64,000 nt of DNA from Scyliorhinus canicula. Taxonomy: Eukaryota. This document shows, piece after piece, positions 61,415 to 63,142 of this stretch. The DNA lies in NCBI RefSeq assembly GCF_902713615.1, contig NW_024055785.1, forward strand, positions 124,001 to 188,000, given 5' to 3'. Made by a program: the position numbers and the translations under genes. The notes under the pieces were generated by a model. It did no database searches, was not told the origin of the DNA, and saw only the letters and a program-made list of their open reading frames with translations. Each line of letters begins with the position of its first letter. Position 1 is the first letter of the stretch.

Positions 61415-61797
61415 GAGTAGGAATGTCAGGATAGATAGGATGAATGCGTGGCTCGAGAGATGATGCAAGAGGGAGGGATTCAAATTCCTGGGGCATTGGG
61501 ACCGGTTCTGGGGGAGGTGGGACCAGTACAAACCGGACGGTCTGCACCTGGGCAGGACTGGAACCGATGTCCCAGTTTTCTAGAGCTGTTGGGGAGGGTT
61601 TAAACTAATGTGGCAGGTGGATGGGAACCAATGCAGGAAGTTGGAAGGTAGTAAAACAGGGACAGAAGCAAAAGGAAGTAAGGGGAAAAGTGCTAGGCAG
61701 AGAAGACATAGTCAAAAATCTAAAAGGGCGACAGTGACTGAGGGGAGCTCAGTGAATAGGCCCAGTAATAACAAAAGGAATAAAACTGGAGATGTAA

Positions 61798-62110
61798 TTA
61801 GAACAGAGAACAGAACAGCACAGAACAGGCCCTTGATGTTGTGCCGAGCAATGATCACCACTACTCAAACCCACGTATCCACCCCATACCTGCAACCCAA
61901 CAACCCCCCCACCTTACTTTTTAGTACACTACGGGCAATTTAGCATGGCCAATCCACCTAACCCGCACATCTTTGGACTGTGGGAGGAAACCGACGCACA
62001 CACGGGGAGGACGTGCAGACTCCGCACAGACAGTGACCCAGCGGGGAATCGAACCTGGGACCCTGGAGCTGTGAAGCATTTATGCTAACCACCATGCTAC
62101 CGTGCTGCCC
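61798..62110 (-). mobile_element. Full-length SINE, 3' part of the chimeric insertion
   Basis: Minus-strand start GGGCAGCACGGTAGCATGG at 62110; tail gttctgttctctgttct. Confidence 0.8.
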
Positions 62111-62147
62111 CAAACATGCAGCTTGACCAACAGAAAACCTAATCGAA

Positions 62148-62237
62148 GGGCTCGTCTGGGATTTGAACCTGGGACCTCTCGCAAATTCCAACAGCGGCAC
62201 ACCCAAAGCGAGAATCATACCCCTAGACCAACGAGCC
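62148..62237 (-). tRNA. tRNA-Pro-TGG: tRNA-Pro(TGG)-like with intron retained; T-stem CpG decay; probable retrocopy
   Basis: 90 nt with intron TGTGCCGCTGTTGGAATT. Only about 2-4 nt of native 5' flank is present. Confidence 0.75.
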
Positions 62238-63142
62238 CCAAAGATGTTAAGATTCAAAACAGAGGTAAAAAAAACCAACATAAGTGTACTTTACCTGAAT
62301 GCTCGTAGTATTCGGAATAAAGTAAATGAGTTGATGGCACAAATCATCGTAAATGACTATGATTTAGTGCCCATTACTGAAACATGGTTAAAGGATGCTC
62401 ACGACTGGGAGTTAAATATCCGAGGGTATCAAACTATTCGAATGACAGAGTGGATGGTAAGGGAGGTGGTGTTGCTCTGTTATTTAAGGATGACATCCGG
62501 GCAATGGTATGGGATGACATCGGTGCTATGGAGGATATCCATTTGGGTGGAAATCAGGAATAGTAAGGCGAAAAAGTCACTGTTAGGAGTAGTCTATTGG
62601 CCACCAAATAGTAACGTTATGGTGGGGCAGGCAATAAACAAAGAAATAACTGATGCATGTAGAAATGGTACAGCAGTTATCATGGGGGATTTTAATCTAC
62701 ATGTCGATGCTTCACAGCTCCAGGGTCCCAGGTTCGATTCCCGGCTGGGTCACTGTCTGTGTGGAGTCTGCACGTCCTCCCCCTGTGTGCGTGGGTTTCC
62801 TCCGGGTGCTCCGGTTTCCTCCCACAGTCCAAAGATGTGCGGGTTAGGTGGATTGGCCGTGCTAAATTGCCCGTAGTGTCCTAATAAAAGTAAGGTTAAG
62901 GGGGGGGTTGTTGGGTTACGGGTATAGGGTGGATACGTGGGTTTGAGTAGGGTGATCATGGCTCGGCACAACATTGAGGGCCGAAGGGCCTGTTCTGTGC
63001 TGTACTGTTCTATGTTCTATGTTCTATGATTGGTTTAACCAGGTCGGTCAAGGCAACCTTGAGGAGGAGTTTATAGAATGCAGATGCACTAGTGATAATG
63101 TACCGAAACTTAATAGACTCTGGCGTGTCTCTTGAGTAGCTC

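What the first reader, a model, noticed from the sequence alone, without database searches (positions are those of the whole stretch)
61790..62250. Unspliced pre-tRNA-Pro + SINE chimera apparently retrotransposed as one unit (possible birth of a composite SINE)
Seen: a CR1 ORF2 N-terminus (...NKTGDV / KIQNRG...LYLNARS) is split by a ~445-bp insertion flanked by AGATGT (61790-61795 and 62242-62247). On the minus strand the insert reads: 2-4 nt of leader, intron-containing tRNA-Pro, ~37 nt of native tRNA-Pro 3' flank with only a T4 run, a full-length SINE, then a CR1-type tail. Established: Pol III starts a few nt upstream of the mature tRNA, T4 terminators can be leaky, and SINEs with CR1 tails are mobilised by CR1 RT. 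Inference: a Pol III read-through from a tRNA-Pro gene into a neighbouring SINE was reverse-transcribed before splicing or RNase P processing.
Basis: partly seen in the sequence, partly recalled or inferred. Interest (0 to 1): 0.78.

Follow-up and report, generated by a model that had tools for sequence, protein, structure and literature searches.

The report
Pre-tRNA-Pro fused to SINE retrocopy
A raw, unspliced and untrimmed proline-tRNA transcript was copied back into this shark-like genome joined head-to-tail to a complete short mobile element (SINE), inside an old LINE; it is a clean example of a known reverse-transcriptase accident, not a new kind of element.

Summary
The anatomy is real. 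Window 61796-62241 (minus strand, 446 nt) reads as follows:
- a 2-4 nt leader
- tRNA-Pro(TGG) with its 18-nt intron
- a 36-nt trailer
- a full-length tRNA-headed SINE with a (TGTTCTA)-type tail

The block sits in the ORF1-ORF2 linker of a degenerate CR1/L2-type LINE. Four intact tRNA-Pro genes in the same window carry the same intron and trailer (90.6-92.2% identity). Uninterrupted LINE relatives (L001, L004) match both flanks colinearly, so the block is an insertion.

1. Homology to the native trailer stops exactly at the genes' second T4 terminator, and the SINE starts at its own first base. This fits a reverse-transcriptase jump from the 5' end of SINE RNA onto the 3' end of a nascent pre-tRNA better than Pol III read-through into a neighbouring SINE.
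2. The AGATGT "TSD" is not proof. Uninterrupted relatives carry two related hexamers 15 nt apart at this site, so the repeat may be the LINE's own sequence with a few bases lost.

The tRNA part is now dead from CpG decay in the T stem. I found no second copy of the junction in the window. The scan has already noted similar pre-tRNA-Pro/SINE fusions on other pieces of this genome, and I could not compare them. The finding is a new member of a known kind.

The parts
61416..61795 (+). Left flank: degenerate CR1/L2-type LINE, covering the ORF1 C-terminus (ORF1 stop at about 61606-61608) and the variable ORF1-ORF2 linker / ORF2 N-terminal extension
   Evidence: tblastn with the L003(-) 851-aa ORF1-ORF2 protein: residues 100-173 hit 61416-61628. 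blastn of 61497-61667 to L004 71-248 gives 78%, E 1e-35. A 70-codon open frame spans 61584-61793.
61790..61795 (+). Left AGATGT hexamer (candidate TSD copy, or the LINE's own first motif)
   Evidence: Sequence. The best local alignment of the left flank ends on L004's first motif AGATGT at L004 314-319.
61796..62111 (-). Full-length tRNA-headed SINE (316 nt) with A and B boxes, a conserved core and a (TGTTCTA)-like LINE-type tail. It carries internal deletions relative to the other copies.
   Evidence: blastn to window copies 55739-56086, 62707-63019, 58279-57970 and 26511-26302. Alignment A2. 5.4% substitutions against the majority of the other copies.
62112..62147 (-). 36-nt pre-tRNA 3' trailer. 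It contains the first T4 run intact and ends in TTT, where the native genes have their second T4 run.
   Evidence: Alignment to four native genes. T-run census.
62148..62183 (-). tRNA-Pro 3' exon, with two CpG-to-CpA changes that break two T-stem pairs
   Evidence: No Rfam tRNA hit at E<=1, against 48.7 bits for the native gene.
62184..62201 (-). 18-nt intron at the canonical 37/38 position (boundary ambiguous by 1 nt because a T sits at both ends)
   Evidence: The same insert is in all four native genes. cmscan places a 21-nt insertion in the anticodon loop of the native gene.
62202..62237 (-). tRNA-Pro(TGG) 5' exon, identical to the native consensus
62238..62241 (-). 5' leader TTGG. Positions -1 to -3 match the flank of the native gene at 37858. 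The outer 1-2 nt could instead be LINE sequence.
   Evidence: blastn to L001 starts at 62241.
62242..62247 (+). Right AGATGT hexamer (candidate TSD copy, or the LINE's own second motif)
   Evidence: Aligns to AGGTGT in L001 (5126-5131) and AAGTGT in L004.
62242..62706 (+). Right flank: the same LINE, covering the ORF2 N-terminus and the APE-type endonuclease domain, with a 1-nt frameshift in an A run
   Evidence: 91% to L001 5125-5600 and 80% to L004 332-804. The translation hits proteins carrying PF03372.
63020..63127 (+). The LINE continues after a second, unrelated SINE insertion
   Evidence: 63028-63080 matches L001 5598-5650 at 94%, and 63079-63127 matches L001 6542-6590 at 82%.
42762..42853 (-). 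Native intron-bearing tRNA-Pro(TGG) gene used as reference. Sister genes lie at 40301-40392(-), 37858-37949(-) and 32377-32465(+).
   Evidence: ARAGORN. Rfam tRNA 48.7 bits. Trailer with two T4 runs.

Best explanation
This is a dead bipartite retrocopy made in one retroposition event. A CR1/L2-type LINE reverse transcriptase primed on the tail of a SINE RNA at a nick in an older LINE copy and copied the SINE to its 5' end. It then jumped end-to-end onto the 3' oligo-U end of a nascent pre-tRNA-Pro(UGG) in the nucleus. That transcript still had its short leader, its intron and a 36-nt trailer, having read through the first T4 run and terminated at the second. The enzyme copied it to its 5' end before the cDNA was joined to the target.

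Shown: the anatomy, the source gene family, insertion into one continuous LINE, and the later decay.
Inferred: the template jump, the single event, and which LINE supplied the enzyme.
For: 1. The tRNA, intron and trailer are 90.6-92.2% identical to four native genes in the same window. About half of the 10-13 differences are CpG transitions, as expected for a silent methylated copy.
2. Homology to the native flank ends exactly at the native second T4 run. All four genes read catgTTTTc there, and the chimera reads catgTTT followed by G.
3. The next base is the SINE's own first base. The same GGGGCAGC start is seen in the other full-length copy at 55739.
4. Both parts lie in the same orientation, head-to-tail, and the retroelement with the LINE-type tail is the 3' part.
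5. Both ends abut LINE sequence that is contiguous, or 4-9 nt apart, in uninterrupted relatives. The linker architecture is kept: the FKL-to-LYLNARS distance is 241 nt here, against 225 in L001 and 197 in L004.
6. The two parts show similar divergence: 7.9% for the tRNA part and 5.4% for the SINE part.
7. From the literature:
- Non-LTR reverse transcriptases perform end-to-end template jumping (PMC8857657).
- A CR1-RT jump from SINE RNA to a tRNA was proposed for the origin of PittSINE (PMC5729268).
- Chimeric retrogenes favour small nuclear RNAs as the 5' part (Buzdin 2003, cited in PMC4758252).
Against: - No donor-locus search was possible, so a gene with a SINE sitting in its terminator cannot be excluded.
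- The flanking hexamers may not be a TSD. The single-event claim therefore rests on parsimony.
- The last ~130 nt of the left flank cannot be aligned significantly to any relative.
- The enzyme's template jumping is inferred from other LINE clades.
- Earlier scan notes list several similar fusions in this genome. These could instead mean a propagating composite family.
Confidence: 0.58

Rival explanations
1. Pol III read-through. A donor tRNA-Pro gene had a full-length SINE inserted in the same orientation in its terminator. One long Pol III transcript covering the tRNA and the SINE was then mobilised through the SINE tail.
For: - The first T4 in the trailer was demonstrably read through.
- Both T runs are followed by C, which weakens termination in yeast (Braglia 2005, cited in PMC4758252).
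- A SINE landing in the second T run would destroy it (TTTT becomes TTTG), which would favour read-through.
- No T4 run lies between the trailer and the end of the SINE.
- Twin SINE was proposed to come from a dimeric tRNA precursor (Feschotte 2001, cited in PMC3272025).
Against: - It needs a full-length SINE whose first base falls inside a 4-nt terminator.
- None of the four native genes in the window has a SINE close downstream.
- Only 2 of 5 close SINE copies here are full-length.
- The control insertion of this SINE family in the same LINE shows no site preference for T runs.
Confidence: 0.2
2. This is one copy of an already propagating composite (dimeric) SINE whose head is a pre-tRNA-Pro, whichever way the first fusion arose.
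For: - Earlier scan notes report several pre-tRNA-Pro/SINE fusions on other pieces of this genome. These are unchecked.
- The A and B boxes of the tRNA part are intact.
- Only one leaky T4 lies inside the unit, and the next T4 is 10 nt past it.
Against: - There is no second junction in 64 kb.
- Most of the earlier notes describe the same setting (inside a CR1, with a 6-bp repeat). That suggests duplicated copies of one insertion rather than independent ones.
- Other notes have different heads (CGG) and shorter units, which suggests recurrent accidents.
Confidence: 0.14
3. Two steps, or a DNA-level rearrangement. For example, a SINE insertion followed by a separate capture of a pre-tRNA cDNA at its 5' end, or recombination between LINE copies around a tRNA gene.
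For: - The hexamers are not a proven TSD.
- Relative to L001, identity drops from 91% to unalignable right at the insertion.
Against: - L004 matches both flanks at equal identity and in order, so the drop is a peculiarity of L001.
- Two independent events at adjacent bases in the same orientation are unlikely.
- A tailless pre-tRNA has no known way to be mobilised alone by a tail-specific LINE.
Confidence: 0.06

Closest known systems
Template-switch chimeric retrogenes of mammals (U6-L1 and related; Buzdin et al. 2003, cited in PMC4758252 and PMC3272025; U6 pseudogene survey PMC4476161)
   Same: - A bipartite, head-to-tail retrocopy.
- The 5' part is a complete small nuclear Pol III RNA ending at its native oligo-U 3' end.
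- The 3' part is a retroelement that carries the signal used by the reverse transcriptase.
   Different: - The enzyme here is a tail-specific CR1/L2-type LINE of a cartilaginous fish, not L1.
- The 3' part is a complete SINE rather than a truncated L1.
- The 5' part is an unprocessed, intron-bearing pre-tRNA.
PittSINE origin in pittas (Suh et al. 2017, PMC5729268)
   Same: A proposed CR1-RT template switch from a SINE RNA to a tRNA during target-primed reverse transcription, which gives a tRNA head on a CR1-tailed unit.
   Different: - In PittSINE the old head was replaced and the product amplified.
- Here the whole SINE is kept (an end-to-end jump), the acceptor is visibly a primary transcript, and no amplification is shown.
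Twin SINE of Culex (Feschotte et al. 2001, cited in PMC3272025 and PMC3531059)
   Same: A two-module tRNA-related unit proposed to descend from an unprocessed Pol III precursor.
   Different: - Twin is a multi-copy family thought to come from a dimeric tRNA read-through transcript.
- Here the junction sits at a terminator and at a SINE 5' end, and only one copy is seen.
tRNA/LINE-1 chimeric insertions in mammals (bioRxiv 10.1101/2025.02.02.635956)
   Same: tRNA sequence co-inserted with a retroelement in one event.
   Different: - Those are mostly antisense tRNA halves attributed to twin priming.
- This one is a sense, full-length precursor with leader, intron and trailer.

Membership tests
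Template-switch chimeric retrocopy | Two RNA-derived parts in the same orientation, joined head-to-tail, with the retroelement as the 3' part | tested here: met
   tRNA-Pro precursor then SINE, both on the minus strand, with the SINE tail distal.
Template-switch chimeric retrocopy | The 5' part ends at the native 3' end of its RNA, and the 3' part starts at (or within) its own RNA, with no intervening genomic flank | tested here: met
   The trailer stops at the native second T4 run. The SINE starts at GGGGCAGC, as in copy 55739.
Template-switch chimeric retrocopy | One target-site duplication flanks the whole chimera | tested here: inconclusive
   AGATGT flanks both ends. However, L004 and L001 carry two related hexamers 15 nt apart at this site, and the flanks align to the first and second respectively. 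A control SINE insertion in the same LINE has only a 0-2 nt duplication.
Template-switch chimeric retrocopy | No genomic locus has the two parts contiguous as a transcription unit (no donor) | not testable with these tools
   The rest of this genome cannot be searched. Nothing was found in the window or in JGI metagenomes.
Composite / dimeric SINE family | Several copies with the same internal junction at independent sites | tested here: not met
   One junction in 64 kb. The genome-wide count is not testable. Earlier scan notes are unchecked leads.
Intron-containing tRNA-Pro gene family of this genome (source of the 5' part) | tRNA cloverleaf with a TGG anticodon and an 18-nt insert at 37/38, plus a shared 3' trailer | tested here: met
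   The native gene scores 48.7 bits on Rfam tRNA, with an insertion in the anticodon loop. The chimera shares the intron and trailer. The chimera itself no longer scores.
V-SINE superfamily / HE1 of sharks and rays (PMC4824008) | tRNA-related head with A and B boxes, a conserved V domain, and a LINE-derived tail | tested here: inconclusive
   The head with box-like motifs and the repeated tail can be read directly. No HE1 or V-domain reference sequence was available, so the assignment rests on memory only.
CR1/L2-group LINE (host element and presumed enzyme source) | Esterase-type ORF1, APE endonuclease and RT domains | tested here: met
   Relatives L001 and L003 carry PF13472, PF03372/PF14529 and PF00078. 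The window flanks match their ORF1 C-terminus and EN domain. The exact clade (CR1 or L2), and identity of the tail with the SINE tail, were not tested because the 3' ends of the relatives are off-contig.

The most novel reading that the evidence does not exclude
The fusion is not a one-off. Pre-tRNA-Pro/SINE composites in this genome form one or more young dimeric SINE families that use the proline pre-tRNA, intron included, as a new Pol III head. This locus would then be an early copy, caught at the birth of a composite SINE.
Probability: 0.14. Interest if true: 0.7.

Novelty: new member of a known kind. Interest (0 to 1): 0.4.

Why it matters
- It is a molecular fossil of a primary Pol III transcript. 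It shows that the unusual intron-bearing tRNA-Pro genes of this vertebrate were transcribed in the germ line.
- It suggests where those transcripts start (2-4 nt upstream) and end (read-through of the first T4, stop at the second).
- It gives a concrete instance, in a cartilaginous fish and with a tail-specific CR1/L2-type LINE, of the SINE-to-tRNA template jump. That jump has been proposed, but rarely seen directly, as the way SINEs gain new heads.
- It also shows a way for tRNA pseudogenes to spread in genomes whose LINEs do not copy arbitrary RNAs.

Tried and rejected
- A word-based protein search with the 70-aa left-linker ORF found no candidates.
- The same search with the 93-aa ORF spanning tRNA, trailer and SINE, meant to find other chimera copies, found nothing at E<=0.001.
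- A scan of JGI metagenome contigs for the junction found 0 hits.
- A junction search in the window with up to 3 mismatches found only the locus itself.
- Rfam on the insert gave no hit.
- A SINE search in loci L001-L004 found no copies.
- MAFFT misplaced the short left flank, so I used anchored pairwise alignments with shuffles instead.
- L001 alone suggested a mosaic or two-LINE scenario (91% on the right, unalignable on the left). I rejected this after L004 matched both flanks at 78-80%.
- I did not run the large representative protein search. The word search showed this LINE subfamily is barely present in the database, and 50% clustering would hide the variable linker.
The flanks were searched separately, and joining was done only inside a script to check the reading frame.
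- Structure and complex prediction are irrelevant here.

Full report
**Setting.** The window is a vertebrate tRNA gene cluster, cartilaginous-fish-like on the evidence of its repeats. ARAGORN tRNA-like genes. Some are real genes in tandem units and some are SINE heads.

**The insert.** The focal call at 62147-62238(-) is labelled Gln(ttg). By sequence it is tRNA-Pro(TGG) with an 18-nt insert after position 37. Read on the minus strand, the insert runs as follows:

| Part | Window coordinates | Length |
|---|---|---|
| Leader TTGG | 62241-62238 | 4 nt |
| 5' exon | 62237-62202 | 36 nt |
| Intron | 62201-62184 | 18 nt |
| 3' exon | 62183-62148 | 36 nt |
| Trailer | 62147-62112 | 36 nt |
| SINE | 62111-61796 | 316 nt |

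The hexamer ACATCT (AGATGT on the plus strand) lies on both sides.

**Source of the tRNA part.** Four intact genes in the same window carry the same intron and the same trailer:
- 32377-32465(+)
- 37858-37949(-)
- 40301-40392(-)
- 42762-42853(-)

Insert nt 2-130 are 90.6-92.2% identical to them. Of the 10-13 differences per comparison, 4-5 are CpG transitions. The exons differ from the native consensus only by two CpG-to-CpA changes, which break two T-stem pairs. Accordingly, the native gene scores 48.7 bits on the Rfam tRNA model, with an insertion in the anticodon loop. The chimera's copy gives no hit at E<=1. The tRNA part is therefore a decayed copy of an unspliced, untrimmed transcript of this gene family. 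Positions -1 to -3 of the leader match the flank of the 37858 gene.

**The junction.** All four native trailers have a T4 run at +9 to +12 and a second T4 run at +33 to +36, each followed by C. The chimera keeps the first T4. It follows the native flank up to three Ts of the second run and then switches to GGGGCAGC. This is the 5' end of the SINE as judged from the only other full-length copy of the family, at 55739. Three further copies are 5'-truncated.

The SINE part is 5.4% diverged from the majority of the other copies and has three internal deletions. Within the unit the only T4 run is the one in the trailer. The next T4 lies 10 nt beyond the insert.

**Is it an insertion in one LINE?** No second copy of the host LINE exists in the window. 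I therefore fetched relatives through the translated right flank and their contigs.
- L001 is a nearly intact LINE with an esterase-type ORF1, EN and RT domains.
- Window 62241-62708 matches L001 5125-5600 at 91%. Window 63028-63080 matches L001 5598-5650 at 94%. The second match also proves that the SINE at 62707-63019 is a separate insertion.
- On the left, L001 matches only the ORF1 C-terminus, at 71%. The last 30-190 nt are not significantly similar to it.
- This looked like a mosaic until L004 was added. L004 matches the left flank (61497-61667) at 78% and the right flank (62245-708) at 80%, in the same order and orientation.
- A fused ORF1-ORF2 protein from L003 also hits both flanks colinearly.
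- The distance from the FKL motif to LYLNARS is 225 nt in L001 and 197 nt in L004. It is 241 nt in the window once the insert and one hexamer are removed.
- The 70-codon left-flank frame continues in frame into VKIQNRG.

So the block sits in the variable linker of a single LINE.

**The 'TSD'.** In uninterrupted relatives this site reads E-D-V-I-N-G-S-V-R-I (L004) or R-E-V-T-D-Q-G-V-K-I (L001). That places two related hexamers 15 nt apart: AGATGT then AAGTGT in L004, and AGAGGT then AGGTGT in L001.
- The left flank aligns best to the first motif. The shuffle test gives 70/500 shuffles reaching the score, or 12/500 if five more bases are included.
- The right flank aligns to the second motif.

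Two reconstructions remain open:
- a true 6-bp TSD in a LINE copy that lacked the five intervening codons, or
- no TSD, with the LINE's own two motifs flanking the insert and 4-9 nt lost.

The control SINE insertion in the same LINE has at most a 2-nt duplication. This agrees with an earlier scan note on another piece (s1-300702). Either way the LINE is continuous across the insert, but the hexamers are not independent proof of a single event.

**Mechanism.** A junction that joins the natural 3' end of a Pol III primary transcript to the first base of a complete SINE is what an end-to-end template jump predicts.
- Such jumps are a documented activity of non-LTR reverse transcriptases (PMC8857657).
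- The same mechanism is invoked for U6-L1-type chimeric retrogenes (Buzdin 2003, cited in PMC4758252) and for the origin of PittSINE by CR1 RT (PMC5729268).
- Read-through needs a donor gene in which a full-length SINE had landed inside the 4-nt terminator. That is possible, and such a hit would itself promote read-through, but it is a much narrower target. None of the four native genes here has a SINE nearby.

My odds are about 0.58 for the jump, 0.20 for read-through, 0.14 for a copy of an existing composite family and 0.06 for two-step or DNA-level scenarios.

**Earlier notes of the scan.** Notes on the same genome, on other pieces, describe several pre-tRNA-Pro(TGG)/SINE blocks inside a CR1 with a 6-bp repeat. 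They also describe fusions with CGG or altered anticodons in other contexts, and 'hundreds' of intron-bearing tRNA-Pro genes. I could not see or compare those sequences.
- The blocks in the same setting may be duplicated copies of this one event.
- The others suggest recurrent accidents favoured by abundant nascent pre-tRNA-Pro.
- Alternatively, though less likely, they indicate a composite family.

**Limits.**
- The rest of the genome could not be searched.
- No reference sequence for HE1 or the V-SINE domain was available.
- The partner LINE's 3' tail was off-contig.
The flanks were searched separately.

**Verdict.** This is a real, well-preserved chimeric retrocopy of a known kind. The read-through and 'birth of a SINE' readings are not supported by what can be tested here.

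Noticed in passing
window 37858-42853, plus 32377-32465: tRNA-Pro(TGG) genes with an 18-nt intron at 37/38 sit in a tandem array of about 2.44 kb period, alternating with tRNA-Val(CAC) at 39190 and 41640. ARAGORN mislabels three of them as Gln(ttg). Intron-bearing tRNA-Pro is unusual for vertebrates (from my own knowledge). All copies share a trailer with two T4 runs.
   Followed up: partly
window 62707-63019 (+): A second, younger (1.6% diverged), 5'-truncated copy of the same SINE family lies in the EN domain of the same LINE. L001 and L004 give a clean empty site, with at most a 2-nt (AT) duplication.
   Followed up: yes
window 61416-63127 vs L001: The host LINE is 91% identical to L001 in ORF2 but only 71% in the ORF1 C-terminus, and the linker cannot be aligned. 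It is evenly 78-80% identical to L004. This suggests modular (mosaic) evolution of the 5' part in this LINE group. The LINE also jumps from L001 5650 to 6542 (an internal deletion of about 890 nt) and ends 16 nt before tRNA-His at 63143.
   Followed up: partly
window 22863-22950, 58391-58480, 63263-63346: ARAGORN's 'tRNA-Leu(taa)' and 'tRNA-Phe(aaa)' calls are about 96% identical to each other. They look like heads of another tRNA-derived SINE family rather than genes.
   Followed up: no
window 60500-61039: Two tandem pairs of a Val-like tRNA with a TAT anticodon (called Ile) and tRNA-Arg(ACG) are exact 298-nt repeats. The TAT copies look like decayed Val genes.
   Followed up: no
L003 52-2607 (-): One relative of the LINE has ORF1 (esterase), EN and RT fused in a single 851-aa open frame. 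In L001 and in the window the FKL frame of ORF1's end is likewise in frame with ORF2.
   Followed up: no
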